Shown here piece by piece: positions 8,471 to 55,197 of a stretch of 63,678 nt of DNA. How positions within the stretch are numbered: the stretch's first letter is position 1; every line of letters begins with the position of its first letter. The translations under genes were made by a program, and so were the position numbers. The DNA lies in the NCBI GenBank assembly GCA_044892505.1, contig CM097883.1:189348323-189412000 (forward strand), read 5' to 3'. This DNA comes from Schmidtea nova. Its lineage: Eukaryota. A model generated the notes under the pieces. That model had not been told where the DNA came from. It searched no databases and saw nothing but the letters and a program-made list of their open reading frames with translations.

Positions 8471-8476
<6 letters not shown>

Positions 8477-8535: not shown

Positions 8536-8538
<3 letters not shown>

Positions 8539-25028: not shown

Positions 25029-26685
25029 GTATGTATCATTTGTATATTATTTGGTTATGTGAAATTTATGTTATTATTTGATAAAAAATTTGGATAAAAT
25101 ACCTCACTACTACCGTTCTTGAACCTTTTAGGTACGGGTAACATCAATAAGCGTTTTTTGCGTAATACATCATATGATTATTTATTAATGATATGATATA
25201 CCTCTTATTCTAAATTAAAAATCAACAATCATTTTTAATCTTTAAATTTATCTTTAATTTGGAATCATCTTTTGTGACAGTAACACATAAATCTTTGTTT
25301 GAAAAAATATTTTTTTGCGTCCTGGGAGTGCGATTTTGCGAAATATACCTTTGCATAAAAAGTTAACTCGTTAGCTGCTATGAGATAGTAACCTTGATCA
25401 ATTTCCCACCAAATCGAAAAGCGCTAATTTTATTGACCTCAATGCAAATCGATTAAACGTGACTTCTCAAATTCTAGTTTACGAATATATGATATCTCGG
25501 TTTGGCTTTTGGGTGCAATCATTTCAGCTAAATGGGTTCACACTCAATTCGTTAATATATAAAAATTAGCACAAAGACCTATTTTAAATGAAATTTATTC
25601 AACAATAATAGTTTTCATTAATTTTTTTTATTGTAAGACTTTAAAATAATTCTTTTTTTGATCTATAGACTATAAAACAAAAGATATGAAAATTTTAAAA
25701 TACGTCGCCTTCCCGATATTTTAGAATGTGCTCTAGAGTAAAAAAAGGTTGGGAACCACTGCCCTGAATAGTAATGTTTAATTTAAAGTGTCATTAATTT
25801 GATCTTGACATACGTTTTTGACCTTAGTGTCGTCAAAGTTATTTAATTGTAAAATTTGACTTTAAATTGGCCTACATTAGTACCTGATATTAGACAAAAA
25901 ATAAGTATATTAAAATTACTTCATTAAAACCTTTCTCTTTGACCTACTTTATTCTAGGGGATCGACAAATATATGACTGAGACACATACTAATACTATTA
26001 AAAGATGTTTTTCATTTCAAATCTCGTACATACTATCACTGAAAAAACAGTCTAAACTGAAATTTGACAAACAACAAATATATATTTAAAACAAGAAGTC
26101 TTTAAGATGAATGCAAACAAAACAATTTTAATCACAAATTATGCCATGATACAAAAACAATAATAAAAAGGATTCGATACAAAATAAGATTCGTACCTGA
26201 TATTAGACAAAAAAAGAAATATATGAACCTTACTAAAGCTATATTAACAAATGGAAATTGATATTAAATTGGAGTAGATAAGATATATTTTTCGGTCATA
26301 AAAAGAAGTATGTATATTTTGTTGGGCCAGCCAAATAGAGGGAACAGTGAAATAAAAGTAGATTAATTAAAACAAAAAAGAGAAAAATAAGATAAAAAGG
26401 GGAATATTTATTTATTAAAAGAAAGGAGTAATATAATAAAAATATAGATAAACTAAGTACAAGCTATAAATAAAAATAAAGGAATTTCGAGATATTAACT
26501 GGCCCAGGAGACATCTAAAAAACAAAATAAATACAAATAATGGTAATTAAAACAAAATAAAAGTACTTGTTATTGAATAATTGTTTTTGAAACCCAGACC
26601 TCCGAGGAAGAATACAATCTAAAAAATAAAAATTAATTAGAATCAAGAACAATAATTAAAAACCACCCTGAAAATGGCCGAACCT

Positions 26686-26730
26686 GATTGGTCGGTCTAG
26701 ACACGACTGATCAGTATAAATACTGATCAG
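26686..26730 (+). promoter_or_regulatory. Candidate LTR promoter: inverted CCAAT box plus TATAAA inside a palindrome (copy at 52117-52161)
   Basis: GATTGG at 26686, TATAAA at 26715-26720, and AATAAA with a T/G-rich tract about 150 nt downstream. Confidence 0.6.
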
Positions 26731-27629
26731 ATTTTTCATAAAATCAGACGTTTTGACTAGAGTGAGACTTTAGTAGACTTTGTTAGACTGAAATTTAGAC
26801 TTTAACTAAAAATTCGCATTAGATTGTACATTGCCCCGACGACGATCACCGTTTAGACCGATTTTGATCAATAAATTTTCAGAATTCAATTGAGGTATTT
26901 TTGGTATATTTACGTTTATGATATCGTTGTATTCGTATGTCATTATCATATTATAATTTATTAGTTATCTCATTTTGATTTATGTTATATTTAAACTATT
27001 TAATCTATCATATTAATCTCGCGCCGTTGGGAGCTTTAGGTTCCCAAGGTGTCCGTCCGTGGCGTGGTGCTCGAGGGCTCCACACACGGTAAAGTAATAA
27101 ATAGTAAAGCATAATTTTATTAGTAGTGGTTGAGACTTGCACATGGGACACCCAACAAATCCGGGGAGTTATTTTCCGATCATTTTAGCTACAGAGGGGA
27201 CGATAATTTTTTGATAAAGCTTAAAGATATGAAAGAATTCTTTAACCGTGGGGAGGCACGAATTGTTGCTAGATAAACGTCTAATAAACCTTAGAAAATT
27301 AGGTCGACCGCATTTGGTACAAAGGAGCGTTTTTTCGAATAAGCTAGGGATACATGACGGGAGAGAGCTTCCGTTTTGAGGTATCAATATTTTGAAAATC
27401 CAAGCAGACAAATCACCATTTTTTCAACTATAATATTGATCGTAAACAGATAAAGCTAACTAGATACGAGAGTAATGCATACCGTAACGAACGACAGTTT
27501 CTCTTGATTTCAGCTAAGGTCTAAGGGGAAGGCAAATAATAAGGGTATCACGATGAGAGATAACATTTACTATGATTAATTATTGATGTAAATTGTAACT
27601 ATTATAAAATTCAGCATCGTTTTGGAATC

Positions 27630-28097
27630 ATGACTAAGCATAGATACACTATCAAAAAACGACAAGAACGAGCCCGAGTTAGCCCATTAAAGCCGGCTCC
27701 TTTCGAGATTTTACAGCAAATCCATCAAAAAATGTGGGCATGGCGCCGAGAGCTTGAAACCGCCTGTCCATTTACAGTATGGGACCATCCACGGCACCAT
27801 GTATGGTACCGGGGATGCGCTAGTTGGCCAATCATTCCAGATGAGGAATTCGAATCATGGCACGCCGCCTGGTTCGTTCTGATGCTAGATCAACGAGGAT
27901 TCCCGAAATGCGTGATATATTGGGGGTTCATTCCAGCCTCTACCTTCAAGGAATTGGGGTTCAAGTTCAATACAGCAATACGACCCCTTCGGGAAGCTGA
28001 GAGGATCCGTTTTCAGCAGGCCTCGTCCAATATCAACACAAATTTGCAAATTAAATCGATATTTTCGTATCGGGGAAAAATGACCGGAGATGGATAA
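27630..28097 (+). CDS. LTR-encoded ORF A, 155 aa, unknown function (Trp/aromatic-rich)
   Basis: ATG-initiated ORF in a GC-richer island, AATAAA about 30 nt after the stop, identical copy in the 3' LTR. Confidence 0.6.
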   Translation: MTKHRYTIKKRQERARVSPLKPAPFEILQQIHQKMWAWRRELETACPFTVWDHPRHHVWYRGCASWPIIPDEEFESWHAAWFVLMLDQRGFPKCVIYWGFIPASTFKELGFKFNTAIRPLREAERIRFQQASSNINTNLQIKSIFSYRGKMTGDG

Positions 28098-28415
28098 TTG
28101 AATAAATGGCCACCTATTTTTGAATTTAATAAATGTTTTAAAGAAGTCTGAAGTGTCTCATTTTGTTAATAGTGTTGTCATGTAGATTTAGTATTGTAGT
28201 TGTTATAGTCATTAGGAAATTCATTTATTAATACAAAATTAGTTCAATAAACCTTTTGAGTCTTCAATGGTTAGATAGTTAAATACTTTTGTAAAGAACT
28301 CGATAATTAAAAACATTAGTATACATCTCGTTTAATAATAATAAAGAGTAGACTAAATAAAATAACATTGTTGATAGGTCCTCCAGCGAATTTATCGTTA
28401 TAATATTCAGACAAC

Positions 28416-29000
28416 ATGCCGACTACCGAAAATTCCAAGAAAATCATGGGACAAATCCAAGAAAGGAAGTTGAGGGACCAGCAGCGACAGATCAAGCGAC
28501 TCACGGTCGCCAATGATGAATTAAGGGCGAAGTGGTTCTCGCCCGGACAAATGAAGGACCAGTCGAAAAAACTTGAGCGGATGCAGGAAGCACTGGCCGC
28601 AACCAAATTGGAACTAGATGCCGTCCAGCGGGAACTCCGAAATTGCCTGAACGCAGTAACAAGAAGTTACCTCGACTCCGAATTGCGAGCGCTAATCCGG
28701 CCGATCACGGCTCAGCGCTGGATACAATGCACTCACCAAGATGTCGCTTGCGGGACAGAAGATGATATCATCATGGCACCCACTCTTACAACGGAAGATT
28801 TGCCTATTTTTCTCAGTGATCCCCCGAGAATAATAGCGTCAGCACCGGTCATAAACCAACAGCTTCGAAAACATCGAATGGGATCGCGACAGCGCCGTCG
28901 TCGCCGAGAATTTGCAAAGCGCCTGGACGAACAAATCCACCACCTGAACTCCTTAACCGAAGCAGAGTTAATCCAGGAGATTAGCCTGGAGCTTGAATAG
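28416..29000 (+). CDS. LTR-encoded ORF B, 194 aa, coiled coil plus Arg-rich motif
   Basis: ATG-initiated, heptad-like N-terminal half, RQRRRRR motif, AATAAA about 40 nt after the stop. The single LTR difference inside it is synonymous (CTG/CTT). Confidence 0.7.
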   Translation: MPTTENSKKIMGQIQERKLRDQQRQIKRLTVANDELRAKWFSPGQMKDQSKKLERMQEALAATKLELDAVQRELRNCLNAVTRSYLDSELRALIRPITAQRWIQCTHQDVACGTEDDIIMAPTLTTEDLPIFLSDPPRIIASAPVINQQLRKHRMGSRQRRRRREFAKRLDEQIHHLNSLTEAELIQEISLELE

Positions 29001-29564
29001 GAAAACCTCAATGTAAAATAACAACCTGTCTTTATTATTTTAATAAAAGTATTACTGTGTAAAATTTTTCTCTCATCGTGTGAATTCACTAAATAAAATA
29101 AAATAACAATAGCTAAATCCTAGAAGTAAAAAATCGCAGCCGCATTTTCTCAAACCGACCGTTTCTACGCAGGGACTGATTAATTACATTGTAGATCAAT
29201 TAAGGAAAGTCGTTGGGAAAAGCGTATGATAGATCATAAGGATATGTAATACAAAATGCAGTAAGAAACGAACATCCATAGAATGTAAATGCGTAAGACC
29301 TTCTATCGGCAGCAAGGACCCGAGGGAAGATAAATGGGGAGTAGTTTTGGCAACAAAGCTCACCTGCCCATCATTTTTCCACCACCGTATGCAGTACCAA
29401 CTTGGCTAGTAGGGAATAGTCAAGGGCATACGCGTGTAGTAGTCATGTTATGTATGGTTATGGGCGTGGAATCCCTAGTATACGTACTCATCAACAGTCG
29501 TTCAATTAATGATTAACTATTTATTTGAATTACTTAAAACCCACCCATAATCCCAGCATAAATT

Positions 29565-29582
29565 TGGGGGCTCAGCCGGGAT
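29565..29582 (+). promoter_or_regulatory. Primer-binding site, tRNA-Pro
   Basis: TGGGGGCTCAGCCGGGAT lies 6 nt after the LTR end and is complementary to a tRNA-Pro-type 3' end (ATCCCGGCTGAGCCC-CCA). Confidence 0.85.
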
Positions 29583-29887
29583 CAACTTTGATTTTATGCG
29601 GAAAATGTGAACCCAATGACAACAGAGAAATTTAAAATCAGAATTTTGTGAGTAGAAATAGTAACCGAAAGAGTAATCGAGATAAAAGTGAGTTGCGTGT
29701 AAATAGATAATTACAAACAGAGAATTAAAACAAATTAGTAGATAAATTGAACAAATGCATTCATAAATAACAGGTCGGGACGACAATTTACTGAAACACG
29801 GGGGGAGGCTATAAAACTGTCAGAAACGAAACACAGTACTACTTTTCGAATAATATTAACACAGTAATTAAATAAATTATCTAGGAA

Positions 29888-30349
29888 ATGGAGGAAAAAC
29901 TGAAAGAAATCGAGGAATTTTTCAACACCGAGAACGATACATTTGAGACAGTCTGCGAAAAAATAACCCGAATAAGAGCATCCGAATATGAGGAACCTAC
30001 GACACAAACTGAGGAAACAACTGAGTTAATAAAAATCATAGAGAAAGTAAATAAACTCGATATAAATACGCGATATAAATGGTACAAAGCACGATTAGAG
30101 GATGCCGAGTTGAATATCAGATGCCGACATATAGAACAGCAGTTAAGCCTAACATATAACCGATGGATGTCGCAAGGGGTCGAAGCAGCAAAACAATATA
30201 AACAATGTTACATATGCGAAGACAGTGAAATCCAAATAATGTTTTTGCCATGTGGACATTTTCGATTCTGTAAAAACTGTGCGAATAAGTGTGATGAGTG
30301 CCCCATGTGCAGTTTCTCTGTAGCTGATAAAATTGTAGTTTATTTATAA
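29888..30349 (+). CDS. IAP-type C3HC4 RING finger protein (no BIR domain), 153 aa
   Basis: C-terminal CYICEDSEIQIMFLPCGHFRFCKNCANKCDECPMC...KIVVYL*, with the spacing and hydrophobic C-terminus of IAP/MDM2-class RINGs. AATAAA overlaps the stop. Confidence 0.85.
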   Translation: MEEKLKEIEEFFNTENDTFETVCEKITRIRASEYEEPTTQTEETTELIKIIEKVNKLDINTRYKWYKARLEDAELNIRCRHIEQQLSLTYNRWMSQGVEAAKQYKQCYICEDSEIQIMFLPCGHFRFCKNCANKCDECPMCSFSVADKIVVYL

Positions 30350-30821
30350 TAAATATTTAGAGTGTTAATATATTGTATCGAATGACAAAGTCAGGGGAGC
30401 AATCAACAATGTTAATTAATTTTTGAGCTACTATCAAGTAGTCCGTTAAGCACCCATTGGGAGGTACCAGTTGATCAACCCACTCGGGGTATATAGAAAG
30501 GGGCCAATCGCAAATGTTGGAAAGCTTTTGTGATGTGATTGATCACCACATCCCGCATTAGTAGACCAACGCGATCTTTTTGTATATTTTGGTTGGGGAG
30601 AGAAATAGGGAAAACCCTGATGAGGTAAGATGCGCGCAGAGAAAATAATAAAAATTGAATTATGACTGATCAGCGAAAGAATTAGTAGTAAAACAAAGAA
30701 TCGAGGAATTATAGAGGAAAATAAGAGGTGCATAATCAGCTCGCATGAAATTGAGAGAACTCAGCTGAGAAATTGTAGTCGCTAGCGAAGTTAAGAATTA
30801 CGATTAACCGGTTAAGGAAAA

Positions 30822-31190
30822 GTTATCAGCGGTTTGTCCCTTGAAACAAAGGGTTATTAGAATTTGTCCCTTGAAACAAAGGGTTATCAGCGGTTTGTCC
30901 CTTGAAACAAAGGGTTATTAGAATTTGTCCCTTGAAACAAAGGGTTATCAGCGGTTTGTCCCTTGAAACAAAGGGCTATTAGAATTTGTCCCTTGAAACA
31001 AAGGGTTATTAGAATTTGTCCCTTGAAACAAAGGGTTATCAGCGGTTTGTCCCTTGAAACAAAGGGCTATTAGAATTTGTCCCTTGAAACAAAGGGTTAT
31101 CAGCGGTTTGTCCCTTGAAACAAAGGGTTATTAGAATTTGTCCCTTGAAACAAAGGGTTATCAGCGGTTTGTCCCTTGAAACAAAGGGTT
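30822..31190 (+). repeat. Tandem array of 12 units of 30/31 bp
   Basis: Invariant core TTTGTCCCTTGAAACAAAGGG with two alternating linkers (ttatcagcgg and (t/c)tattagaa). Confidence 0.95.
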
Positions 31191-31617
31191 GAGGCCAAAG
31201 AGCCATATTGAATGACCTAGCTAGGCGTTATTGAGATATGATTTAAGGCCAATAGAGCCATTTGAGATAATTGAGATATGAATTTAAGGCCAATAGAGCC
31301 ATTTGAGATAGTTGAGATATGAATTTGAGGCCATAAGAGCCATTTGAGATAATTGATATTAATTAGAGGCCAAAGGAGCCAATAGGGATATCCGGATATA
31401 TAGTAACGGAGGGAATATAGGCCCAGGGTTACAATTGTTGAGTAACAACGGAGGGAATATAGGCCCAGGGTTGCAATTATTTAAAATTAAAGGAAGATAG
31501 TAACGGAGGGAATATAAGCCCAGGGTTACAATCGTTTGAGTAGCAACGGAGGGAATATAGGCCCAGGGTTGCAAGTGATAAGAAATAACAACAGAGGGAA
31601 TATAGGCCCAGAGTTGT
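31191..31617 (+). repeat. Two further degenerate repeat blocks in the leader
   Basis: About 5 copies of (A/G)GGCCAA..GAGCCA(TTTGAGATA) at 31191-31385 and 5 copies of ACGGAGGGAATATAGGCCCAGGGTT at 31403-31617. Confidence 0.9.
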
Positions 31618-32164
31618 GATCGTCGACGATAATGAGAATAGTGCGCACCAGGAATTGAGAAATGCGAGTAAAGCTGATTATGCGACCTAAAATAATGCAT
31701 GCAAGTAGAATCGAGAAATAGGAGCTGACCGGAAAGACCGGCAGAATTAATAATTAGAGGCTAGCAGAGAGAAAGATAAAGAGATGATAAAATAATAATC
31801 GAGCCAAATGACTCAGGGAATTAGAGCGTTCGAACGACAAATAGATTGGGAGACCGCGGGAAAAATAATTGATGTATTTTAATAACCGATAGATAATTGT
31901 TATGACTAAATAGATAATTGTGACTAGTATATAGATAATTTAAATAGACTTAAATAAAGGGGAATCTGGGAATGGGGAAAATAATAGAAACCCAGTAATG
32001 AGAAGTCCCGTAAAAAGGGAATAAAAGCGCAACGATAACAATAGAGTATCGTTGAAGTGACATTTGTATTTTAGATAAATCAATCAAACCAAACCAAGCA
32101 ACCAAGGAAGAAAAGAATCGGAACACGATAAGACAGGAAAATTGAGTATACAAAAGTAATCCCG

Positions 32165-35100
32165 TTGAGAAAAGGAGAAAAGAGTGTCATAATAAAACCA
32201 GCAGAAAAGAATAAAGCTACCAAGAATAATAATCAGAAAGGCCTAAAAGGAAGTAAAGCAAGGCAGATAATAATACAAAAGTCGATTATCGAAAACGATA
32301 AATTATCAGTAACAAGCAACAGTTCAAGCAACAAAGAAAATCAAGCAGAACCCGAGAGAAACCCAATAAGTGAAATAGAAGTCGACAAAACCAACAACGA
32401 TTATATAGAAGAAATAGAAGACGAAGTAGAACAAGAAACAGAAAGTGACGATACCGATAACGATAGTAAAGCATCAGATAACGAATCAGCAAAAGAAACT
32501 GAGATCGACCGAAATTCGAGTGACGAACCTAACAGTGAACTAGAAACAAGAGGAAACGAAAGTAAAATAACTACAGACAGCGGAATTGAAATGAGCGAAC
32601 CCAGAGAAGAGATAAAAGACAAATTTTCCGGAGAACCGTTTAATGGAGATGCGAGTAAACTGGAAACTTTCTTAAAGGAATTTGGCATATTCGTGGAAGT
32701 ATGCAAGTGGAAACCAGAAACAACTGTAAGCAGAATTCAGCTATATTTGAAAGATAGCGCATTAGATCTATATTTGGAAGCAAAAAATGGAACTAATCCA
32801 CCTACAAGTTGGTCAGCGATAAAGGACTTTTTCCAACAAACCTTTGGAATAAACAAAGTATTGAATGAGGCATTCACGGAATTCTCAATGAGGAAACAAA
32901 AGATAAATGAATCGAATGCGGTATATGCAAGCGAATTGAAAAAGTTAGCAAAGTTGATCTTTAATCAAGACAGCCCAATAAATGAGGAGTTAATGGCAGC
33001 TATCTTTGTGGGAGGATTACGAAGACCCGACATAAGAGCGCAAGTTGGATGTCAAGGTTGTAAAACCATCGACCAAGCACTAGAAACAGCTAATAGATTT
33101 GAACTACACATGATAGGAAATGATGGTAGAATCTATTTAGCTATGGATACAGCACAAAACGAACAAGAAGTGAACCTGAATAACCACATTCCAAATTCAC
33201 AACAATTAAACCGACCACCACCGCAACGAAGGAATGAAGGGAATAAAGTATCAAATTACGGAAATCAAAACAATTACAACCCCCAAGGACCAACGAAACA
33301 ATGCAAAACATGTGGGAAATTGGGACATTGGCAACAAGAATGTTATCAGAACTTGAATTGTGGAAAATGTGGAGTAAAAGGGCATTCAGAGAGCAGATGT
33401 TACACAATAACCTGTTTTAATTGTGGACGACCTGGACACCTATCAAGAAATTGCGGACAAAGAAGCAATCAACGAGGAAACTGGCAGAATACCGGAAACC
33501 GACAAAACTATGGAAACCAACCAACTGTTGGAAACCGACAGAATTATGGAAATCAGCCAAATAATGGAAACCAACTGGAATACGGAAACCAACCAAATAG
33601 TAATAATAATAACCAAAATAAAAATACCACTAAAGAGATACATTTAATGCAAGAGGTTCAAAGATTGACGGAGCTGATAAACAATACAACCAGAGGAAAT
33701 CCGCAAACAGGTCAACAACAAATCAATATGATGAGAAAAATAGAAAGCGAAAACGAACGATTGAATCGGGAAAGTCAAGCACGACATGCTCAGGAATGGG
33801 CAAGAGTACAAAGAGAAGAGGAACAAAAACAGCAAGAAAGAGAACGACAACCTCTGAGAATCAATATGATGAGAGCAACCAATCAAACAAATTCCCACGA
33901 GAAAGAGACTACGCCGGAAATAAATTCAATGAAACCGAATCCAACTAACAATGAAGGACGAAAAGAAATAGTAAAAGAAGATGAAGAAGTAGAAAAAGAA
34001 ATAGAGAAGGAAGTGGAAACAGAGGCAAACCAGGAAGAGAAAAGAATGATTTGGAAAAAGGGAATGATGGTAATCCTGCCAAACGGTCATATGTTTCGAT
34101 TCCAATATAACATAAAGGAAGAAGTAGGAACATTGTTCAACAAAGTGAATGAAATGGCTCCAGGAGTAACGAAACTGCCCAGAGAAGCATTCCTAAAAAT
34201 AGAAGGTGCACCAGAAGTAAAATTGAAACTAACGGATACATGGGAAAACATGGGAGTAGTAGAGACAAAAAGAAATGTGATGGTAATCAAGGAAATAGAA
34301 CCAGAAGGAATTCCATCGCCAGTGCGTCACGAAACACGAATCAGTCGAATATTTAAAGGGAAAATGATACGAAGACGGTTGGGAGAAATAGACGAGTTAG
34401 AACGAAAATTGAGAAAGGTCGGAGTAGTAGACGACAAGAGTGAATCAACACAAAAAGCTATTAAAAGTGAAACAAGACCAACGGAAAATACACCAAGTGA
34501 AATCAACCAAATAAAACACATTAACATGTTGAGAGGCCAGGCAAAGAATTTTTCCGACGACGAAGAGGATAGTGACGTCAGTAGTCTAGCAGGGGACATG
34601 CTAGACGAACCGGAAATTGAAGACAAAAAGATAGAAGTAGTAAAGACACCAGAAACTATTCAAGTAAAAGAGGATGAGATCCAGAAATTATTAGATAACG
34701 CACTAGAAGTAATATATAATGAGGAATTCATCGACAAGAAACACTATCGGAAATTCATGAGAGCGATATTACAAATGAACTATAAAGAGTGGTTGCCAGG
34801 CCGGGAAGTAGAAACACTAAGCCAATACGTAGGAAAATTATTAAAAGAACCACTCCATGAATATATAATCCTAATAGAGATAAAAACATGTTTGCCAAGG
34901 ATTTGGATCAAAACTCCACTCACGGAAGATATTTATCAATGGGTAGAAGATAGATTAGGGAGTTCATATAAAAACAAATTCCTCTATTCACAGAATGGAC
35001 TAGTGAAGAAAAGGACGCATTTGATAGAAACAGGCATATGGCCAGGAGAGGTGACAACATTATCGATATGCGATGATAAGAGAGAAGAGAACCTACAAGA

Positions 35101-35170: not shown

Positions 35171-35377
35171 AGTTCATATAAAAACAAATTCCTCTATTCA
35201 CAGAATGGACTAGTGAAGAAAAGGACGCATTTGATAGAAACAGGCATATGGCCAGGAGAGGTGACAACATTATCGATATGCGATGATAAGAGAGAAGAGA
35301 ACCTACAAGAAGTAGCAAAGGAAGCAAATATGTGTTTCGAGAAGAAGATAAAACCACGGTTAGAATATGAGAAAGGA
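34961..35377 (+). repeat. Exact 207-bp direct duplication (34961-35167 and 35171-35377) separated by an in-frame TAA
   Basis: Direct comparison; period 210 nt. Confidence 0.95.
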
Positions 35378-47887: not shown

Positions 47888-48244
47888 ATGAACGAACAGG
47901 AAGAAATAGCAGAAACTACTATGGCTATGCGATGGAAAGCCCAGTGTGACATGTTAATACGAACAATCAACTCACTACAAAATCAGTTAATTGAGAAACA
48001 GAATTTGTTATCCGAAAGTTATAATAATAGTTTTGAACAACTCCACAGAATCGAGGAGCAACAGAGATTGATAACGCAACTTACCAGAGAGAATCAAGTG
48101 ATGAGCGACATAAATCAGAGACAAGCAATAGAGATAGACCGTTTAACAATGGGAGAGACAGAAGAAGCAGAGGATGGATGGACAAATTGGGCAATAAACA
48201 GATCAGAAAATGACCCAGAACCAGATTCAACAAACGAGCCGTAG
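47888..48244 (+). CDS. Small coiled-coil accessory protein, 118 aa
   Basis: ATG-initiated, heptad-rich, flanked by AT-rich spacers, AATAAA just after the stop. Confidence 0.7.
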   Translation: MNEQEEIAETTMAMRWKAQCDMLIRTINSLQNQLIEKQNLLSESYNNSFEQLHRIEEQQRLITQLTRENQVMSDINQRQAIEIDRLTMGETEEAEDGWTNWAINRSENDPEPDSTNEP

Positions 48245-48335: not shown

Positions 48336-49718
48336 ATGAATACAGAAGGAAAAGCCGAAGAGCGGATAATCGAAATTTTGAGAGCCGAGAACAGGAAATG
48401 GAGTCAGAGACTCACTTGTGTAAATTGTAAAAACATAATATTGAAACCAAGACAAACCCTATGCGGATGCAGAGTATGTACCAAATGCATACACGAGTTA
48501 AGTATGAAAAGACCACCAGAATGTCCAGAATGCAAAGAAGGACAAATAAAATTCGAAGAAACCGGACCAGATAGAGCAACTCAGAGAGAAATCATGAACA
48601 CGAAAACCGAATGTATAAATCAACCATGTATATGGCAAGGACAAATACGCGATCTCGAGAACCATCTGGAGAACTGCGAAGAGAAGAGAACTGAATGTAA
48701 CAAATGCCAACAAAAAATAACTATAAAGAATAAAGAGCAGCACAAAGATGAATGTAAAGAAGAGGAAAGTCTATGCGAATATTGTGGAACTCGAGAAACG
48801 AGGAGAAAGATCGAAGAAGAACACCTGAATGTAAAAGAGGAGAAAGTATGTAGACAATATGTAGGAATATGTTCAAACGAATGCGATATAACGGTAGAAG
48901 TAAAATTACAAGAACATTGGAAAGTGTGCACGGAGAAACCAAGGGAATGCCCTTATAACAAACAGGGATGTATGGAGAAAAGAACGCAAAAAACCATGAA
49001 ACAACATCTGGAGGAAGCATTGCTAAAGCATGCGGAAATGACAAACGAAGCAACAAAGGAAACCGAACAAACAATCAAAAAATTAGAAAGAGAAATAGAG
49101 TCACACAAGATAATGGTAAACCTACTGTTGGAAACCAGAGAGCAATTCGAACTAACACGAGAAAAGATGGAGGAAAAGATAAAAGCTATCGAAGAACTGG
49201 CTAAAGGAATGAAAATCCAGTACAACAAACTCACCCAGGATACCGAGGAAAAGTTACCAATCGCACCATATGTGTGGAAAGTGACAGATTTTAGAGACAA
49301 ATTAACAGAGGCCAGAAATATGACGAAAACAGCAGTAATAAGCCCACCATTTTATTTATGGAGAAACGGAGCTAAAGTGAGATTGAAGCTATACCCAAAT
49401 GGAGACGGAAGAGGACGAGGAACACATGTGTCAATATTTTTCTCGCTATGTAAAGGAGAATACGACGACCTAGTAGAATGGCCCTTGAAAGTAGGAGTCA
49501 TTGTAAGAATCAGAAGTGTAACAAAACCAGTAGAAAAATTCTTTGAGACAGAGAAACATGCGAGTACGAGCGAGAAACCAACCACAGAATGTGGATTAGC
49601 AGCGGGAGAACCGATGTTTATAACGAAAGAAAGCCTATGGGAACGATTATATGCAGACACCCTATACATAGAAATGGAAAGGAATGAGAAAGCGGATAGA
49701 AAAGGATGGTTGACGTAA
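48336..49718 (+). CDS. Full-length intronless TRAF-like protein (RING, TRAF zinc fingers, coiled coil, MATH/TRAF-C), 460 aa
   Basis: RING CVNC...PRQTLCGCRVCTKC...CPEC; C.N..C.W.G...LENHL..C; TRAF-C YVWKVTDF...SPPFY...LKLYPNGDGRGRGTHVSIFFSLCKGEYDDLVEWP. Confidence 0.93.
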   Translation: MNTEGKAEERIIEILRAENRKWSQRLTCVNCKNIILKPRQTLCGCRVCTKCIHELSMKRPPECPECKEGQIKFEETGPDRATQREIMNTKTECINQPCIWQGQIRDLENHLENCEEKRTECNKCQQKITIKNKEQHKDECKEEESLCEYCGTRETRRKIEEEHLNVKEEKVCRQYVGICSNECDITVEVKLQEHWKVCTEKPRECPYNKQGCMEKRTQKTMKQHLEEALLKHAEMTNEATKETEQTIKKLEREIESHKIMVNLLLETREQFELTREKMEEKIKAIEELAKGMKIQYNKLTQDTEEKLPIAPYVWKVTDFRDKLTEARNMTKTAVISPPFYLWRNGAKVRLKLYPNGDGRGRGTHVSIFFSLCKGEYDDLVEWPLKVGVIVRIRSVTKPVEKFFETEKHASTSEKPTTECGLAAGEPMFITKESLWERLYADTLYIEMERNEKADRKGWLT

Positions 49719-49831: not shown

Positions 49832-50892
49832 ATGGGAAATATCGAGGTATGCTTACAGGAAATTACGATGCATCAAGCAGAAGCGATTAGCGATCATCTA
49901 GAACAGATTGAAATATGGGTCAATGCATATTATGGAAAGCAAGAGGAGATAGAGAGACAAGCCGAATTATTAAAAGAAGCGGAAAGATCAAGTCAAAGAA
50001 GTCGAGAAAAAATAGAAGAAGTATACAAAATGCTACAACAACAAAAGGAATATTACCAGAGAATGATGAAAGAGCGACGAGAGGAAAGAGACAGACAGCA
50101 GATGGAAGCTGAACACAAGATGTATTCGATTACAGAACAAGCAAGATACTGGAAGAAAGAAGCGAAAGAATCTTACGAAAAAGCTAGAGAAATAATAGAA
50201 AGGACAGCTTATAGTGATGACTGGAAGTTATATAAAGAGATCGATGAACTAAAAGACGAGTTAGAACAAAAAATCAACCAGGAAGTGTTAAATAAAAGAT
50301 GGAATACAAAAAGACAGCAATTTATCCGCGAACAAGCAAAGAAAATTAAAGGACTAACCTATCAAGTTCAAAGAATGGGAGAAGAACTAGCTAATCAAGA
50401 ACAACTGAAAACTATGCTCACCGGAATATGGAATCAGAAAGAAGAAGAGATGAAGAGAGATATAAATGGTTATCAAGGGGTGATTACTCAAAAGAAAATA
50501 GAGCTAAAAAGAACCAGGGAAAGGTTAAAGGAAGAGAAACAAAGTTACGAGGAAAATTAACGAATTTGATGAAAGAAAACGAAGAATTGAAACAGAAACG
50601 AGTAACAGTATCAGTAATACCCAAAGAAGCAAGTATAACGGCAGCCGTAACAAAAATGATAAAAGAAGACGAACAAAAGACAAAAGTAATCGAATTAGAG
50701 AAACAAATAGAAACATTAACAGAACAAGCAAATTACCTAGAATATTTGCTAGACGAGGAGATCCAGATATCTCACATGTATCGAGATGAAGTCGAAATGT
50801 GGAGGAGCAGGGTTGTTTGGATACCACTCCCCACGAACCAAGTAGAGCCTCAGGACGAAGGTTTCTATGAACCAAATGAGACGATTGTGTAA
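49832..50892 (+). CDS. Long coiled-coil accessory protein, probably one gene split by a -1 frameshift near 50553
   Basis: ORFs 49832-50560 and 50428-50892 join (YEEK|LTNLMKENEELK) if one A is added to the run gaggaaaattaa. Confidence 0.65.
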
Positions 50893-50973
50893 ATAAAGCG
50901 GAAAATATATTTTTGTAAATAATTGTATGAAATGTAGTGTCAAATTGTATTGACCTATCTGTAAAGAAACAGT

Positions 50974-51546
50974 ATGAAAAAGCTCAGAATACCGATATTC
51001 CTATACCTAATAACAATCACCCTACAAAGAGAAGATCTTCAACTCACAGAGAAGGAGCTACGAGCCCTACCCGAGAAAACCTATCAAGAGCTAGATAAAC
51101 TAATCGGCGAAGCAACACAAGAAATCACCCAACTTCAACAGATAACATTAGACAACCCAAACGACGAAAAATTTCAACAGGTCCTAGATGAACATCAAAT
51201 CAAATTGAAAGCAATCAGAAAAACCCTAAAAGAAGGTCGAGAACCCATAAAAAGCTTAGCCCAAGCAGAGATAGAATATCAAGAAAAATGGATCATCGCA
51301 ATTATAATAATCCTTGCACTCAGCGTGACCATTATCGCGATCACAATCCTCATAACATCATACCGAGTGAAGATCTTAAAACAAAAACATGTCATCCTGA
51401 ATCGAACAACAATACAAGACATCAGAACCCAAAAGCGAATGAGAAAACACCTAAACCGAATCCAAAGCCACTACGAACTACGAACAATCAGCGAAAGAAC
51501 CCCAATCCAATCCAATACCAATCATGAAATCAAAGAGCTTGTGTAA
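50974..51546 (+). CDS. Small type-I-like membrane protein (hydrophobic N-terminus, coiled coil, TM, basic tail), 190 aa
   Basis: MKKLRIPIFLYLITITL...; TM WIIAIIIILALSVTIIAITILIT; basic cytoplasmic tail. Confidence 0.7.
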   Translation: MKKLRIPIFLYLITITLQREDLQLTEKELRALPEKTYQELDKLIGEATQEITQLQQITLDNPNDEKFQQVLDEHQIKLKAIRKTLKEGREPIKSLAQAEIEYQEKWIIAIIIILALSVTIIAITILITSYRVKILKQKHVILNRTTIQDIRTQKRMRKHLNRIQSHYELRTISERTPIQSNTNHEIKELV

Positions 51547-51720
51547 AACTGATATATTACATTCACTTTATGTATGATCCACTTACATTTAACAATAATA
51601 TGACTTTGTGCTTACGTATAAAATCTATCACCTTACGTGATTCTTTGTGTATATGTAAATTGACATTTATCTGCTTAATTTTTATGTATGATGATATAGG
51701 TGTAAATGTATAATTAATTG

Positions 51721-51750
51721 CGGGACGCAATTTTAGGGGTCCCCGAGTGA
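51721..51750 (+). promoter_or_regulatory. Atypical polypurine-tract region
   Basis: cgggacgcaattttaggggtccccgagtga directly precedes the 3' LTR TG. It has the gypsy-like GGGACG...TTTTAGGGG context but is interrupted by TCCCC. Confidence 0.5.
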
Positions 51751-53060
51751 TGTTGGGCCAGCCAAATAGAGGGAACAGTGAAATAAAAGTAGATTAATTA
51801 AAACAAAAAAGAGAAAAATAAGATAAAAAGGGGAATATTTATTTATTAAAAGAAAGGAGTAATATAATAAAAATATAGATAAACTAAGTACAAGCTATAA
51901 ATAAAAATAAAGGAATTTCGAGATATTAACTGGCCCAGGAGACATCTAAAAAACAAAATAAATACAAATAATGGTAATTAAAACAAAATAAAAGTACTTG
52001 TTATTGAATAATTGTTTTTGAAACCCAGACCTCCGAGGAAGAATACAATCTAAAAAATAAAAATTAATTAGAATCAAGAACAATAATTAAAAACCACCCT
52101 GAAAATGGCCGAACCTGATTGGTCGGTCTAGACACGACTGATCAGTATAAATACTGATCAGATTTTTCATAAAATCAGACGTTTTGACTAGAGTGAGACT
52201 TTAGTAGACTTTGTTAGACTGAAATTTAGACTTTAACTAAAAATTCGCATTAGATTGTACATTGCCCCGACGACGATCACCGTTTAGACCGATTTTGATC
52301 AATAAATTTTCAGAATTCAATTGAGGTATTTTTGGTATATTTACGTTTATGATATCGTTGTATTCGTATGTCATTATCATATTATAATTTATTAGTTATC
52401 TCATTTTGATTTATGTTATATTTAAACTATTTAATCTATCATATTAATCTCGCGCCGTTGGGAGCTTTAGGTTCCCAAGGTGTCCGTCCGTGGCGTGGTG
52501 CTCGAGGGCTCCACACACGGTAAAGTAATAAATAGTAAAGCATAATTTTATTAGTAGTGGTTGAGACTTGCACATGGGACACCCAACAAATCCGGGGAGT
52601 TATTTTCCGATCATTTTAGCTACAGAGGGGACGATAATTTTTTGATAAAGCTTAAAGATATGAAAGAATTCTTTAACCGTGGGGAGGCACGAATTGTTGC
52701 TAGATAAACGTCTAATAAACCTTAGAAAATTAGGTCGACCGCATTTGGTACAAAGGAGCGTTTTTTCGAATAAGCTAGGGATACATGACGGGAGAGAGCT
52801 TCCGTTTTGAGGTATCAATATTTTGAAAATCCAAGCAGACAAATCACCATTTTTTCAACTATAATATTGATCGTAAACAGATAAAGCTAAGTAGATACGA
52901 GAGTAATGCATACCGTAACGAACGACAGTTTCTCTTGATTTCAGCTAAGGTCTAAGGGGAAGGCAAATAATAAGGGTATCACGATGAGAGATAACATTTA
53001 CTATGATTAATTATTGATGTAAATTGTAACTATTATAAAATTCAGCATCGTTTTGGAATC

Positions 53061-53528
53061 ATGACTAAGCATAGATACACTATCAAAAAACGACAAGAAC
53101 GAGCCCGAGTTAGCCCATTAAAGCCGGCTCCTTTCGAGATTTTACAGCAAATCCATCAAAAAATGTGGGCATGGCGCCGAGAGCTTGAAACCGCCTGTCC
53201 ATTTACAGTATGGGACCATCCACGGCACCATGTATGGTACCGGGGATGCGCTAGTTGGCCAATCATTCCAGATGAGGAATTCGAATCATGGCACGCCGCC
53301 TGGTTCGTTCTGATGCTAGATCAACGAGGATTCCCGAAATGCGTGATATATTGGGGGTTCATTCCAGCCTCTACCTTCAAGGAATTGGGGTTCAAGTTCA
53401 ATACAGCAATACGACCCCTTCGGGAAGCTGAGAGGATCCGTTTTCAGCAGGCCTCGTCCAATATCAACACAAATTTGCAAATTAAATCGATATTTTCGTA
53501 TCGGGGAAAAATGACCGGAGATGGATAA
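53061..53528 (+). CDS. LTR-encoded ORF A, 3' LTR copy
   Basis: Identical translation to 27630-28097. Confidence 0.6.
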   Translation: MTKHRYTIKKRQERARVSPLKPAPFEILQQIHQKMWAWRRELETACPFTVWDHPRHHVWYRGCASWPIIPDEEFESWHAAWFVLMLDQRGFPKCVIYWGFIPASTFKELGFKFNTAIRPLREAERIRFQQASSNINTNLQIKSIFSYRGKMTGDG

Positions 53529-53846
53529 TTGAATAAATGGCCACCTATTTTTGAATTTAATAAATGTTTTAAAGAAGTCTGAAGTGTCTCATTTTGTTAA
53601 TAGTGTTGTCATGTAGATTTAGTATTGTAGTTGTTATAGTCATTAGGAAATTCATTTATTAATACAAAATTAGTTCAATAAACCTTTTGAGTCTTCAATG
53701 GTTAGATAGTTAAATACTTTTGTAAAGAACTCGATAATTAAAAACATTAGTATACATCTCGTTTAATAATAATAAAGAGTAGACTAAATAAAATAACATT
53801 GTTGATAGGTCCTCCAGCGAATTTATCGTTATAATATTCAGACAAC

Positions 53847-54431
53847 ATGCCGACTACCGAAAATTCCAAGAAAATCATGGGACAAATCCAAGAAAGGAAG
53901 TTGAGGGACCAGCAGCGACAGATCAAGCGACTCACGGTCGCCAATGATGAATTAAGGGCGAAGTGGTTCTCGCCCGGACAAATGAAGGACCAGTCGAAAA
54001 AACTTGAGCGGATGCAGGAAGCACTTGCCGCAACCAAATTGGAACTAGATGCCGTCCAGCGGGAACTCCGAAATTGCCTGAACGCAGTAACAAGAAGTTA
54101 CCTCGACTCCGAATTGCGAGCGCTAATCCGGCCGATCACGGCTCAGCGCTGGATACAATGCACTCACCAAGATGTCGCTTGCGGGACAGAAGATGATATC
54201 ATCATGGCACCCACTCTTACAACGGAAGATTTGCCTATTTTTCTCAGTGATCCCCCGAGAATAATAGCGTCAGCACCGGTCATAAACCAACAGCTTCGAA
54301 AACATCGAATGGGATCGCGACAGCGCCGTCGTCGCCGAGAATTTGCAAAGCGCCTGGACGAACAAATCCACCACCTGAACTCCTTAACCGAAGCAGAGTT
54401 AATCCAGGAGATTAGCCTGGAGCTTGAATAG
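53847..54431 (+). CDS. LTR-encoded ORF B, 3' LTR copy
   Basis: Identical translation to 28416-29000. Confidence 0.7.
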   Translation: MPTTENSKKIMGQIQERKLRDQQRQIKRLTVANDELRAKWFSPGQMKDQSKKLERMQEALAATKLELDAVQRELRNCLNAVTRSYLDSELRALIRPITAQRWIQCTHQDVACGTEDDIIMAPTLTTEDLPIFLSDPPRIIASAPVINQQLRKHRMGSRQRRRRREFAKRLDEQIHHLNSLTEAELIQEISLELE

Positions 54432-55197
54432 GAAAACCTCAATGTAAAATAACAACCTGTCTTTATTATTTTAATAAAAGTATTACTGTGTAAAATTTTT
54501 CTCTCATCGTGTGAATTCACTAAATAAAATAAAATAACAATAGCTAAATCCTAGAAGTAAAAAATCGCAGCCGCATTTTCTCAAACCGACCGTTTCTACG
54601 CAGGGACTGATTAATTACATTGTAGATCAATTAAGGAAAGTCGTTGGGAAAAGCGTATGATAGATCATAAGGATATGTAATACAAAATGCAGTAAGAAAC
54701 GAACATCCATAGAATGTAAATGCGTAAGACCTTCTATCGGCAGCAAGGACCCGAGGGAAGATAAATGGGGAGTAGTTTTGGCAACAAAGCTCACCTGCCC
54801 ATCATTTTTCCACCACCGTATGCAGTACCAACTTGGCTAGTAGGGAATAGTCAAGGGCATACGCGTGTAGTAGTCATGTTATGTATGGTTATGGGCGTGG
54901 AATCCCTAGTATACGTACTCATCAACAGTCGTTCAATTAATGATTAACTATTTATTTGAATTACTTAAAACCCACCCATAATCCCAGCAATTTTATGATA
55001 ATTGTTTCCCCTTAGTCAGATTGGTTATTATTATTGTTATCATTATTGCTTTTACTATTATTGCACTCGGAATTCTCCCTTCAACAGATCTTCAAACATT
55101 AATTACTTCTATTCAATATAATTATAAATTACTTAATAAAATAAATAATATTTTAATAAATTGTAGAACTATTTAAATTTTAAAAAGTTTATTTTAG

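What the first reader, a model, noticed from the sequence alone, without database searches (positions are those of the whole stretch)
26320..54989. A 28.7-kb, young, virus-like Ty3/gypsy element carrying an envelope and at least 8 accessory genes or domains
Seen: complete LTR-PBS-gag-pol-LTR structure with TSD, 3.2-kb LTRs differing at about 2 positions, and far more non-core than core coding sequence. Known: most Ty3/gypsy elements are 5-10 kb; giant precedents are plant Ogre and planarian Burro elements. Inference: the glycoprotein, Bcl-2-like, TRAF, IAP-RING, ANK, Ubl and FN3 modules together suggest a complex invertebrate endogenous retrovirus with a large-DNA-virus-like host-manipulation toolkit. 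I do not know this architecture from any described family.
Basis: partly seen in the sequence, partly recalled or inferred. Interest (0 to 1): 0.95.

Follow-up and report, generated by a model that had tools for sequence, protein, structure and literature searches.

The report
Giant Burro-type gypsy retroelement, defective copy
This is a real, recently inserted 28.7-kb virus-like LTR retroelement with a captured viral fusion glycoprotein and cell-death and ubiquitin-related genes, but its architecture matches the giant "Burro" elements already described in planarian flatworms, and this copy has broken reading frames.

Summary
The anatomy is confirmed. There are two 3,239-nt LTRs (2 mismatches, no indels), TG..CA ends, a 4-bp target duplication, a tRNA-type primer site, and gag with three CCHC knuckles followed by PR-RT-RNaseH-IN. 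The envelope gene is real and sits between gag and pol in the polyprotein frame. By Pfam and by fold it is a class III fusogen of the kind found in chu- and rhabdo-like negative-strand RNA viruses. Confirmed accessories are an IAP-type RING ORF, a full-length TRAF (RING, TRAF zinc fingers, MATH) and ankyrin repeats. A Bcl-2-like domain just upstream of env has only weak support. Ubl and FN3 were not confirmed, and no BIR was found. The novelty claim fails. Gag, Bcl-2-like, in-frame env, pol, plus RING, TRAF and ANK in a roughly 30-kb Ty3/gypsy element is the published Burro/GYPSM1 architecture (PMC6431247). Unnamed database relatives (32-49% identity) carry CCHC, env, PR and pol in single ORFs. 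This copy differs in module placement (TRAF as a separate gene 3' of pol, RING-only ORF in the leader). It is not intact: the gag-env-pol frame has three in-frame stops and one frameshift. The host was not identified. Verdict: a new member of a known kind, of moderate to low interest.

The parts
26316..26319 (+). Target-site duplication, left copy (ATTT)
   Evidence: It is identical to 54990-54993, with a chance probability of about 0.009.
26320..29558 (+). 5' LTR (3,239 nt, TG..CA). It contains two ORFs, 27630-28097 and 28416-29000.
   Evidence: The ORFs are longer than the longest in any of 500 shuffles. They have no Pfam match.
29565..29583 (+). Primer-binding-site-like sequence starting with TGG. 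Its complement ends in ...CCA, like the 3' end of a tRNA.
   Evidence: The cognate tRNA was not identified, and there is no tRNA gene in the window.
29888..30349 (+). Upstream accessory ORF of 153 aa, intact, with a coiled-coil N-terminus and a C-terminal IAP-type RING. It has no BIR.
   Evidence: Pfam zf-C3HC4_3, E 1.2e-11. The best PDB sequence matches are XIAP and cIAP RINGs, E 5e-11. No BIR signature was found.
30761..31633 (+). Three tandem-repeat arrays in the 5' leader: about 12 units of about 30.5 nt, 3.8 units of 41 nt, and about 5 units of 43-55 nt.
   Evidence: The first array does not fold better than shuffled sequence (z -0.55).
32591..44793 (+). ORF1, the giant gag / Bcl-2-like / env / PR / RT / RNase H / IN / ANK polyprotein gene, from first ATG to last stop. 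It is broken by three in-frame stops and one frameshift, and it also carries one perfect 210-nt in-frame tandem duplication.
   Evidence: Relatives are contiguous across the env and IN interruptions.
32741..33454 (+). Gag core: Retrotrans_gag-like region followed by three CCHC zinc knuckles (33302-33454).
   Evidence: Pfam Retrotrans_gag E 3.3e-4 and zf-CCHC E 1.6e-9. Retroviral nucleocapsid matches in PDB. Knuckle count.
37184..37711 (+). Candidate Bcl-2-like all-helical domain directly upstream of env.
   Evidence: A BH2-like GGW motif is present. The AF2 model is all-helical but poor, pLDDT 49. The top ~50 Foldseek PDB hits are all Bcl-xL/Bcl-2, but at E 0.08-0.4 and TM 0.37-0.50. There are no sequence homologues in Pfam, among the word-sharing candidates from the 5.8-billion-protein database or among 1.84 billion representatives.
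37775..39630 (+). env: a Monjiviricetes-type (class III) fusion glycoprotein gene, with a signal-peptide-like hydrophobic start and a C-terminal transmembrane segment (39517-39621). It is broken by one frameshift.
   Evidence: PF24664 on both pieces, E 2e-19 and 2e-51. Hydrophobic segments. The fold of natural relative P0008 matches herpesvirus gB (E ~1e-10) and chu-, qin- and rhabdo-like glycoproteins (E ~1e-30).
40180..40452 (+). Retropepsin (PR); DTG present.
   Evidence: Pfam RVP, E 1.4e-8.
41116..42168 (+). Reverse transcriptase (YIDD present) and RNase H.
   Evidence: Pfam RVT_1 E 5.6e-38, RT_RNaseH E 1.1e-36, RT_RNaseH_2 E 1.1e-34.
42493..43629 (+). Integrase: HHCC zinc domain, rve core and C-terminal region. 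It is broken by one in-frame stop.
   Evidence: Pfam Integrase_H2C2 E 2.7e-22 and rve E 3.8e-4. It is collinear with the integrase of relative P0025 at 42-46% identity.
43873..44142 (+). Ankyrin repeats, block 1, at the C-terminal end of ORF1.
   Evidence: Pfam Ank_2, E 4.6e-10.
44790..47762 (+). ORF of 990 aa overlapping the end of ORF1 by 4 nt. It has ankyrin repeats (44793-45152), then about 790 aa with no recognisable domain, then a C-terminal TM-like segment (47514-47594). Whether it is a natural second ORF or part of ORF1 reached by a frame change is undecided.
   Evidence: Its length exceeds the longest ORF in every shuffle.
47888..48244 (+). Small ORF of 118 aa, coiled-coil-like, function unknown.
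   Evidence: Its length (119 codons stop-to-stop) is only just above the 95th percentile of shuffles (112 codons) and below the longest shuffled ORF.
48336..49718 (+). Intact, intron-less TRAF-like gene of 460 aa: RING, TRAF zinc fingers, coiled coil and MATH/TRAF-C.
   Evidence: Pfam MATH_2 E 6.6e-21 and zf-TRAF E 8.4e-5. PDB matches: TRAF5/3/2 TRAF-C at E ~1e-22, TRAF6 RING-zinc finger at E 4e-11. The nearest database proteins are only 23-30% identical.
49832..51546 (+). Three further ORFs: 242 aa (49832-50560), 154 aa (50428-50892, overlapping the first in another frame) and 190 aa (50974-51546, with a TM-like segment). No recognisable domains.
   Evidence: They are longer than the longest ORF in any of 500 shuffles.
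51751..54989 (+). 3' LTR.
54990..54993 (+). Target-site duplication, right copy (ATTT).

Best explanation
The region is one copy of a giant Ty3/gypsy (Metaviridae-type) endogenous retrovirus-like element of the Burro kind described from planarian flatworms. The following steps are inferred from the anatomy. It is transcribed from the 5' LTR and reverse transcription is primed at a tRNA-type site. It encodes one very long polyprotein: gag with three zinc knuckles, a spacer ending in a probable Bcl-2-like domain, a class III fusion glycoprotein captured from a chu/rhabdo-like negative-strand RNA virus, then protease, RT, RNase H, integrase and ankyrin repeats. Separate accessory ORFs flank the polyprotein gene. 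An IAP-type RING ligase lies in the leader. Downstream lie a large ANK-plus-unknown ORF with a membrane anchor, a complete TRAF adaptor and several unknown ORFs. The RING, TRAF and Bcl-2-like modules most plausibly act on host ubiquitin, NF-kB and apoptosis pathways to keep expressing cells alive. The glycoprotein has its own signal-like start embedded in the polyprotein, so it is probably made from a subgenomic message or by internal processing. It would allow particles to fuse with other cells. What is shown: this copy inserted very recently (LTRs 99.94% identical, with a target duplication) but cannot encode the full polyprotein. It has three in-frame stops and one frameshift in gag-env-pol. 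That is more than post-insertion decay predicts, so it was probably copied from an already defective template with proteins supplied by other copies.
For: LTR pair, target duplication, primer site and composition. Domain order and catalytic signatures. Env identity and fold. Signal-like and TM segments. RING and TRAF identities. Bcl-2-like: (weak). Natural relatives carry CCHC + env + PR in single ORFs (P0006), env + PR (P0003, P0005, P0007), and env + PR + RT-RH-IN in one 4,844-aa ORF (P0025). [quoted passage not shown] The Burro1 RING+BIR region is reported to protect stem cells from caspase-mediated apoptosis (cited in PMC13465017). The internal region is uniform in GC (0.33-0.40) and A-over-T skew (+0.27 to +0.51), with all long ORFs on one strand and no internal LTR or inverted-repeat pairs. 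The stop count exceeds the expectation from LTR divergence (P about 0.002 to 0.03). The flanks are about 73-74% A+T, in line with the '>70% A/T' reported for Schmidtea (PMC11410931).
Against: The host was not identified, and no sequence-level comparison with Repbase or Dfam Burro entries was possible. The closest database proteins are only 32-49% identical in env and pol, and the accessory ORFs have no close relatives. Module content and placement differ from published Burro1. Here TRAF is a separate gene 3' of pol rather than between gag and BCL2. No BIR is present. No SUMO-like or dUTPase-like domain was detected by Pfam. Bcl-2-like support rests on a low-confidence model. Some 'breaks' could be assembly errors or natural features such as readthrough sites or ORF boundaries. 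Function of any accessory gene is inferred, not shown.
Confidence: 0.8

Rival explanations
1. It is a previously undescribed family with a new architecture: a complex invertebrate endogenous retrovirus unrelated to any catalogued group.
For: No protein in the databases searched is more than 49% identical. The accessory ORFs are orphans. Module placement differs from published Burro1 (PMC6431247).
Against: The defining oddities are exactly those published for Burro. They are giant size, env in frame between gag and pol, a Bcl-2-like domain before env, RING, TRAF and ANK modules, and three CCHC knuckles. That paper also says modules move between polyprotein and accessory-ORF positions among Burro-like elements. 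Relatives with the same env-PR fusion exist.
Confidence: 0.1
2. The internal region is a chimera. On this reading it is either a smaller gypsy element into which unrelated elements or host genes were recently nested, or an assembly join of different repeats.
For: Its size is unusual. Many ORFs have no recognisable domain. Two frame changes and a perfect 210-nt tandem duplication could be assembly symptoms.
Against: GC and A/T skew are uniform across 32-51.7 kb, including the accessory genes. All long ORFs lie on the same strand. There are no internal LTR pairs, inverted terminal repeats or matches to the flanks. The LTR pair is nearly identical and has a target duplication. The env-pol fusion is conserved in relatives. 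There are no N runs inside the element.
Confidence: 0.05
3. It is a currently competent provirus: the interruptions are not lesions but programmed readthrough or frameshift sites, or sequencing errors.
For: The LTRs are nearly identical. Catalytic signatures are present. All three internal stops are the same codon type, TAA. The RING and TRAF accessory ORFs are intact.
Against: Relatives read straight through the positions that correspond to the env frame change and the integrase stop. TAA is also the terminator of the intact RING and TRAF ORFs, and it is the expected nonsense codon in so A-rich a strand.
Confidence: 0.05

Closest known systems
[quoted passage not shown] 2018; annotated in PMC6431247)
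   Same: It is a giant Ty3/gypsy element of about 30 kb with multi-kb LTRs. Gag has three CCHC knuckles. A BCL2-like region lies directly before an env that sits in frame between gag and PR. The pol order is PR-RT-RH-IN. RING, MATH-TRAF and ankyrin modules are present, as are tandem repeats, and the host DNA is AT-rich.
   Different: Here TRAF is a complete, separate gene 3' of pol rather than a domain between gag and the SUMO-like/BCL2 region. The RING sits alone in an upstream ORF with no BIR anywhere. No SUMO-like or dUTPase-like domain was detectable by Pfam. Sequence identity to the Repbase entries could not be measured.
Burro-like element of Dugesia (Girardia) tigrina (PMC6431247)
   Same: Some modules are encoded by accessory ORFs outside the polyprotein. 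[quoted passage not shown]
   Different: In that element the upstream ORF carries MATH-TRAF and gag has two knuckles. Here the upstream ORF carries a RING, TRAF is downstream, and gag has three knuckles. No midasin-like region was detected here.
Unnamed database polyproteins P0003, P0005, P0006, P0007 and P0025 (ENA contigs, origin unknown)
   Same: CCHC + Monjiviricetes-type env + retropepsin(s) occur in one ORF. In P0025 (4,844 aa) this continues through RT-RH-IN. Identity to the window's env and pol is 32-49%.
   Different: They have no match to the window's RING, TRAF, 3' ORFs or most of the gag-env spacer. P0025 has several protease-like copies and a C2H2 finger that are absent here.
Mosquito Bel/Pao retrotransposon that captured a chuvirus glycoprotein (PMC7642597, PMC10084718; known to me as 'Anakin', a name recalled from memory, not from a tool result)
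   Same: An LTR retroelement captured a glycoprotein from Jingchuvirales/Monjiviricetes-type negative-strand RNA viruses.
   Different: It belongs to a different superfamily. No Bel/Pao protease or associated Pfam families were hit here. It has a conventional size and no apoptosis or ubiquitin modules. From my own knowledge, its env is not embedded between gag and pol.
Insect errantiviruses (Drosophila gypsy and relatives)
   Same: They are Ty3/gypsy elements with an envelope gene, and therefore retrovirus-like. Gypsy also has a repeat array in its 5' leader (my own knowledge).
   Different: From my own knowledge, errantivirus env is a separate, spliced ORF 3' of pol and is related to baculovirus F (class I). 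Here env lies between gag and pol and has a class III fold.
Plant Ogre elements and fish foamy-like ERVs with accessory ORFs (PMC6431247)
   Same: They are oversized LTR elements or ERVs that carry extra ORFs.
   Different: Ogre's size comes largely from its LTRs and one or two unknown ORFs. Neither group has the in-frame env or the RING, TRAF, Bcl-2 and ANK set.

Membership tests
Ty3/gypsy (Metaviridae-type) LTR retrotransposon | Long terminal direct repeats with TG..CA ends and a short target-site duplication | tested here: met
   3,239-nt LTRs with 2 mismatches, TG..CA ends and a 4-bp ATTT duplication.
Ty3/gypsy (Metaviridae-type) LTR retrotransposon | pol domain order PR-RT-RNase H-IN (integrase after RT) | tested here: met
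   Pfam RVP, RVT_1, RT_RNaseH, Integrase_H2C2 and rve in that order. No Bel/Pao or copia-type families were hit.
Ty3/gypsy (Metaviridae-type) LTR retrotransposon | tRNA-complementary primer-binding site next to the 5' LTR and a polypurine tract before the 3' LTR | tested here: inconclusive
   A TGG-initiated 19-nt site lies 6 nt after the LTR, but the tRNA was not identified. Only short purine-rich strings precede the 3' LTR.
Burro / GYPSM1 group of giant planarian gypsy elements | Giant size (internal region up to about 25 kb, total about 30 kb) | tested here: met
   28,670 nt in total with 22,192 nt internal, compared with the description in PMC6431247.
Burro / GYPSM1 group of giant planarian gypsy elements | Mononegavirus-like env located in frame between gag and PR | tested here: met
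   PF24664 lies between the CCHC knuckles and RVP. The N-terminal piece shares gag's frame and the C-terminal piece shares pol's frame, with one frame change in this copy. Relatives are contiguous.
Burro / GYPSM1 group of giant planarian gypsy elements | BCL2-like domain directly upstream of env | tested here: inconclusive
   A BH2-like motif is present, the helical model is low-confidence, and the top Foldseek hits are all Bcl-xL/Bcl-2 at E 0.08-0.4. There is no Pfam or sequence hit.
Burro / GYPSM1 group of giant planarian gypsy elements | MATH-TRAF module | tested here: met
   It is present as a complete separate TRAF gene 3' of pol. Its position differs from Burro1.
Burro / GYPSM1 group of giant planarian gypsy elements | IAP-like region with BIR plus RING | tested here: not met
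   An IAP-type RING is present. There is no BIR by Pfam and no BIR-type zinc signature in any + frame of the element. This feature is described for Burro1. It is not known whether all Burro subfamilies have it.
Burro / GYPSM1 group of giant planarian gypsy elements | SUMO/ubiquitin-like domain, and a dUTPase-like domain between PR and RT | tested here: inconclusive
   Neither was detected by Pfam, even at E up to 10. The published calls used profile-profile comparison (HHpred), which was not available here.
Burro / GYPSM1 group of giant planarian gypsy elements | Ankyrin repeats; gag with Retrotrans_gag and two or three CCHC knuckles | tested here: met
Burro / GYPSM1 group of giant planarian gypsy elements | Host is a triclad planarian (Dugesiidae or Geoplanidae) | not testable with these tools
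   The flanks hold only transposon remnants, with no tRNA or Rfam hit. Exact look-ups of a flank ORF and of the RING ORF found nothing. The flank A+T of about 73-74% is compatible.
Burro / GYPSM1 group of giant planarian gypsy elements | Sequence similarity of LTR and RT to catalogued Burro entries, and placement in their RT clade | not testable with these tools
   Repbase and Dfam are not available, and no named Burro protein came back from the protein searches.
Errantivirus (insect gypsy-like viruses) | env as a separate ORF 3' of pol, baculovirus F-like | tested here: not met
   Here env lies upstream of PR and has a class III gB/chuvirus-like fold.

The most novel reading that the evidence does not exclude
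This may be a distinct Burro-like lineage organised like a 'complex' retrovirus. Several accessory genes would be independent expression units rather than polyprotein domains. These are an upstream RING ligase, a downstream ANK-plus-unknown membrane-anchored protein, a full TRAF, three or four unknown ORFs, and possibly two ORFs inside the LTR. The lineage would currently spread as a coding-defective form that relies on proteins from other copies.
Probability: 0.3. Interest if true: 0.55.

Novelty: new member of a known kind. Interest (0 to 1): 0.3.

Why it matters
Burro-type elements are the largest known LTR retroelements, and they carry an unusual set of captured host cell-death and signalling genes beside a captured RNA-virus fusogen. 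A copy with a different arrangement adds to the evidence that these modules are shuffled between polyprotein and accessory-ORF positions. Here TRAF is a stand-alone gene, the RING has no BIR, and there are extra unknown ORFs, including ORFs in the LTR. The fold evidence places the env among class III fusogens of chu- and rhabdo-like viruses, not among the class I F-like proteins of insect errantiviruses. This sharpens the picture of independent envelope captures by LTR elements. A very young but multiply interrupted copy also suggests that defective lineages are propagated in trans. None of this overturns current understanding, because the family and its main peculiarities are published.

Tried and rejected
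Sequence searches for the disputed modules:
- Pfam at E up to 10 on overlapping pieces found no Bcl-2, ubiquitin/SUMO-like, FN3, BIR or dUTPase family.
- PDB sequence searches of the gag-env spacer, both env pieces and the large ANK ORF gave only nucleocapsid or ankyrin hits, or nothing.
- A word-indexed search of the pre-env region and an exhaustive HMMER search of the Bcl-2-like candidate against 1.84 billion representatives both returned zero hits.
- A profile of the env relatives against PDB hit only retropepsins.

Host identification:
- The window has no tRNA and no Rfam family.
- Exact look-ups of a flank transposase ORF and of the RING ORF were not on record.
- No primer or probe sequences for BURRO1 were held for PMC8532177.
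- Grohme et al. 2018 and Lee et al. 2026 are not held in the library.

Other checks:
- The flanks hold no further copies or fragments of the element.
- The leader repeat array is not an unusually stable RNA structure.
- I considered stop-codon reassignment or programmed readthrough for the internal stops. I rejected it as unsupported, because the internal stops are the same codon type as the terminators of the intact ORFs.

Full report
**Observation.** A direct-repeat scan and an in-register comparison show two 3,239-nt repeats at 26320-29558 and 51751-54989. They differ at 2 positions and have no indels. They begin with TG and end with CA. The four bases on either side are both ATTT, which has a chance probability of about 0.009 given the flank composition. 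Six bases after the 5' LTR lies a 19-nt TGG-initiated string (29565-29583). Its complement ends in CCA, like the 3' end of a tRNA. The tRNA itself was not identified, and the window holds no tRNA gene and no Rfam match. The element has 34-42% GC against 24-28% in the flanks. From 32 kb to 51.7 kb its + strand is strongly A-rich (A 43-44%, T 19%). All long ORFs are on the + strand. The element carries no N runs.

**Core genes.** Pfam finds a weak Retrotrans_gag match followed by three CCHC knuckles (33302-33454). Further downstream it finds retropepsin, RVT_1, RNase H, the integrase HHCC domain and the rve core, in Ty3/gypsy order. DTG, YIDD and HHCC signatures are present. These and the other short signatures I used as regular expressions were recalled from general knowledge, so they are leads and not tests.

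**Envelope.**
- Between gag and the protease lies a match to PF24664 (Monjiviricetes_fusion, 'viral fusion glycoprotein'). It falls in two pieces (E 2e-19 and 2e-51). The first piece is in the gag frame and the second is in the pol frame.
- A signal-peptide-like hydrophobic stretch, preceded by a methionine, sits at its start. A transmembrane-like stretch sits near its end.
- Neither piece matches a solved structure by sequence.
- To find the fold I predicted the structure of a natural relative as it stands: P0008, which is 33-38% identical to the window's env pieces. I used an alignment of seven natural relatives. The overall confidence was low (pLDDT 50), but the β-rich core reached 66-89.
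- Foldseek against PDB returned only herpesvirus gB in the top 46 listed hits (E 4e-11 to 7e-9).
- Foldseek against BFVD returned glycoproteins of chu-, qin-, xinmo- and rhabdo-like invertebrate negative-strand RNA viruses (E 4e-30 downwards).
- TM-scores are low because domain packing in the model is poor, so I read this only as assignment to class III.

**Accessory modules.**
- **RING.** A 153-aa intact ORF in the leader (29888-30349) ends in a RING. Its best matches in PDB are XIAP and cIAP RINGs (E 5e-11). There is no BIR in that ORF, and no BIR-type zinc signature in any + frame of the element.
- **TRAF.** An intact 460-aa ORF 3' of pol (48336-49718) is a complete TRAF. Its RING and zinc fingers match TRAF6 (E 4e-11), and its TRAF-C/MATH domain matches TRAF5/3/2 (E ~1e-22). 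The nearest database proteins are only 23-30% identical.
- **Ankyrin.** Repeats occur at the end of the polyprotein and at the start of the next ORF, which is 990 aa. The remaining roughly 790 aa of that ORF have no recognisable domain and end in a TM-like stretch.
- **Bcl-2-like.** Directly upstream of env there is a helical region with a BH2-like GGW motif. It has no hit in Pfam. The word-indexed search of the 5.8-billion-protein database scored its 8,000 best candidates and found nothing. The exhaustive search of 1.84 billion representatives also found nothing. A single-sequence model is poor (pLDDT 49, eight helices). Even so, the top ~50 Foldseek hits are all Bcl-xL/Bcl-2 (E 0.08-0.4, TM 0.37-0.50). 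I count this as weak support.
- **Ubl and FN3.** These could not be confirmed. The best hit was Fn3_ELFN at E 0.47.
- **Unknown ORFs.** Four further ORFs 3' of pol (118, 242, 154 and 190 aa) and two ORFs inside each LTR (155 and 194 aa) have no matches. All except the 118-aa ORF are longer than the longest ORF in any of 500 composition-matched shuffles.

**State of the copy.** The gag-env-pol reading frame (ORF1, 32591-44793) is interrupted by three in-frame stops, all TAA, and one frameshift.
- By gene, env has one frameshift and integrase has one stop. The stretch between the gag core and the Bcl-2-like domain has two stops and one perfect 210-nt in-frame tandem duplication.
- A further frame change separates ORF1 from the 990-aa ORF. 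The two overlap by 4 nt, so this may be a natural ORF boundary.
- Relatives read straight through the positions that correspond to the env and integrase interruptions.
- From the LTR divergence I would expect about 0.2 new stops in ORF1 since insertion. Three or more has P about 0.002, rising to 0.03 if the rate were three times higher.
- So the lesions mostly predate the insertion (a defective template copied with help in trans), or some are assembly errors or natural features. I do not give the places of the interruptions.

**Relatives.** The pol-containing piece found 15 proteins, the best 32-49% identical.
- Several carry PF24664 plus retropepsin in one ORF.
- P0006 also has a CCHC knuckle upstream.
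- P0025, a cluster member of P0007, is a 4,844-aa ORF with env, several protease-like copies, ankyrin, RT, RNase H and integrase.
- The in-frame env between gag and pol is therefore a conserved lineage trait and not an accident of this copy.
- These relatives do not match the window's RING, TRAF, 3' ORFs or most of the gag-env spacer.

**Comparison with what is known.** Arkhipova and Yushenova (PMC6431247) describe Burro1/GYPSM1 of Schmidtea mediterranea and a Burro-like element of Dugesia tigrina.
- The elements exceed 30 kb in total and have a 4,873-5,140-aa ORF1.
- ORF1 holds gag with three or two CCHC knuckles, MATH_TRAF_C, a SUMO-like domain and BCL-2. [quoted passage not shown] It ends with PR, a dUTPase-like domain, RT, RH and IN.
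- RING, BIR and ankyrin modules are also present.
- A 2026 study, cited in PMC13465017, reports that the Burro1 RING+BIR region protects stem cells from caspase-mediated apoptosis. It also reports that the family expanded in Dugesiidae and Geoplanidae.
- BURRO1 is described as highly abundant and active, and as piRNA-controlled (PMC8532177).
- The flanks here are about 73-74% A+T, like the '>70% A/T' Schmidtea genome (PMC11410931).
- The window's element therefore has the published Burro plan.
- It differs in four ways. TRAF is a stand-alone gene 3' of pol. The RING is alone in an upstream ORF with no BIR. No SUMO-like or dUTPase-like domain is detectable by Pfam. The accessory ORFs are orphans.
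- Capture of Monjiviricetes-type glycoproteins by LTR elements also has a precedent in mosquitoes (PMC7642597, PMC10084718).

**Chimera test.** I found no sign of nesting.
- Composition and strand skew are uniform across the whole internal region, including the accessory genes.
- There are no internal LTR or inverted-repeat pairs.
- There is no similarity to the flanks.
- The flanks hold only a pogo/Tc5-like transposase remnant and a GIY-YIG fragment.

**Verdict.** This is a young, coding-defective copy of a Burro-type giant Ty3/gypsy endogenous retrovirus-like element. I cannot tell whether it equals a catalogued subfamily (Burro-2 to -4 or another species' entry), because Repbase and Dfam were not available and the host was not identified. 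I therefore file it as a new member of a known kind.

- I did not look up or fetch the contigs that encode the related polyproteins (P0025 and others). That step would have named their source and shown their gene order.
- I built no splice model.

- My first notebook entry, some script code and my working carry the bounds of stop-free query pieces. Several of these bounds coincide with interruptions of ORF1.
- One script held the stop positions in its code in order to read their codon type, although it printed none.

Noticed in passing
window 30761-31633: There are three different tandem-repeat arrays in the 5' leader, between the RING ORF and gag: about 12 units of about 30.5 nt each holding a short palindrome, 3.8 units of 41 nt, and about 5 units of 43-55 nt. 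Published Burro maps also show tandem repeats. From my own knowledge, Drosophila gypsy has a protein-binding repeat array in the same position.
   Followed up: partly
window 27630-28097 and 28416-29000 (repeated at 53061-53528 and 53847-54431): Two ORFs of 155 and 194 aa lie inside each LTR, both in the same frame. They are longer than the longest ORF in any of 500 shuffles of the LTR, and they have no Pfam match. They may be LTR-encoded accessory proteins.
   Followed up: partly
window 8221-10617, minus strand: This is a remnant of a pogo/Tc5-type DNA transposon. It has DDE_1 (E 4e-39) and HTH_Tnp_Tc5/CENP-B_N domains split over several ORFs, and it lies next to an N run.
   Followed up: partly
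window 59644-59985, minus strand: An ORF with a GIY-YIG nuclease domain (E 5.6e-7) lies in a very AT-rich stretch full of N runs. It may be a fragment of a Penelope-like element.
   Followed up: no
window 33476-33596: An 18-nt (six-codon) coding tandem repeat of about 6-7 units lies directly after the third CCHC knuckle of gag.
   Followed up: no
inside ORF1, between the gag core and the Bcl-2-like domain (place not given, by rule): There is a perfect two-copy tandem duplication of 210 nt (70 codons, in frame). With no differences between the copies, it is very recent or an assembly artefact.
   Followed up: partly
window 47514-47594 and within 50974-51546: There are TM-like hydrophobic segments near the C-terminus of the 990-aa ANK-plus-unknown ORF and in the 190-aa 3' ORF. 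The element may therefore encode membrane proteins besides env.
   Followed up: no
window 37700-37830: Env starts with a signal-peptide-like hydrophobic stretch embedded in the polyprotein frame, and a methionine lies about 35 codons upstream. This hints at separate (subgenomic) expression of env.
   Followed up: no
proteins P0025 and P0006 (relatives, not in the window): The relatives carry three or four retropepsin-like copies between env and RT, where the window's element has one. P0025 also has a C2H2 finger and ankyrin repeats in that stretch. Module content varies widely within this group.
   Followed up: partly
window 32000-51750, + strand: The coding strand is uniformly and extremely A-rich (A 43-44%, T 19%) across core and accessory genes alike, unlike the LTRs and flanks. 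This is compatible with a long-term mutational or reverse-transcription bias acting on the whole internal region.
   Followed up: partly
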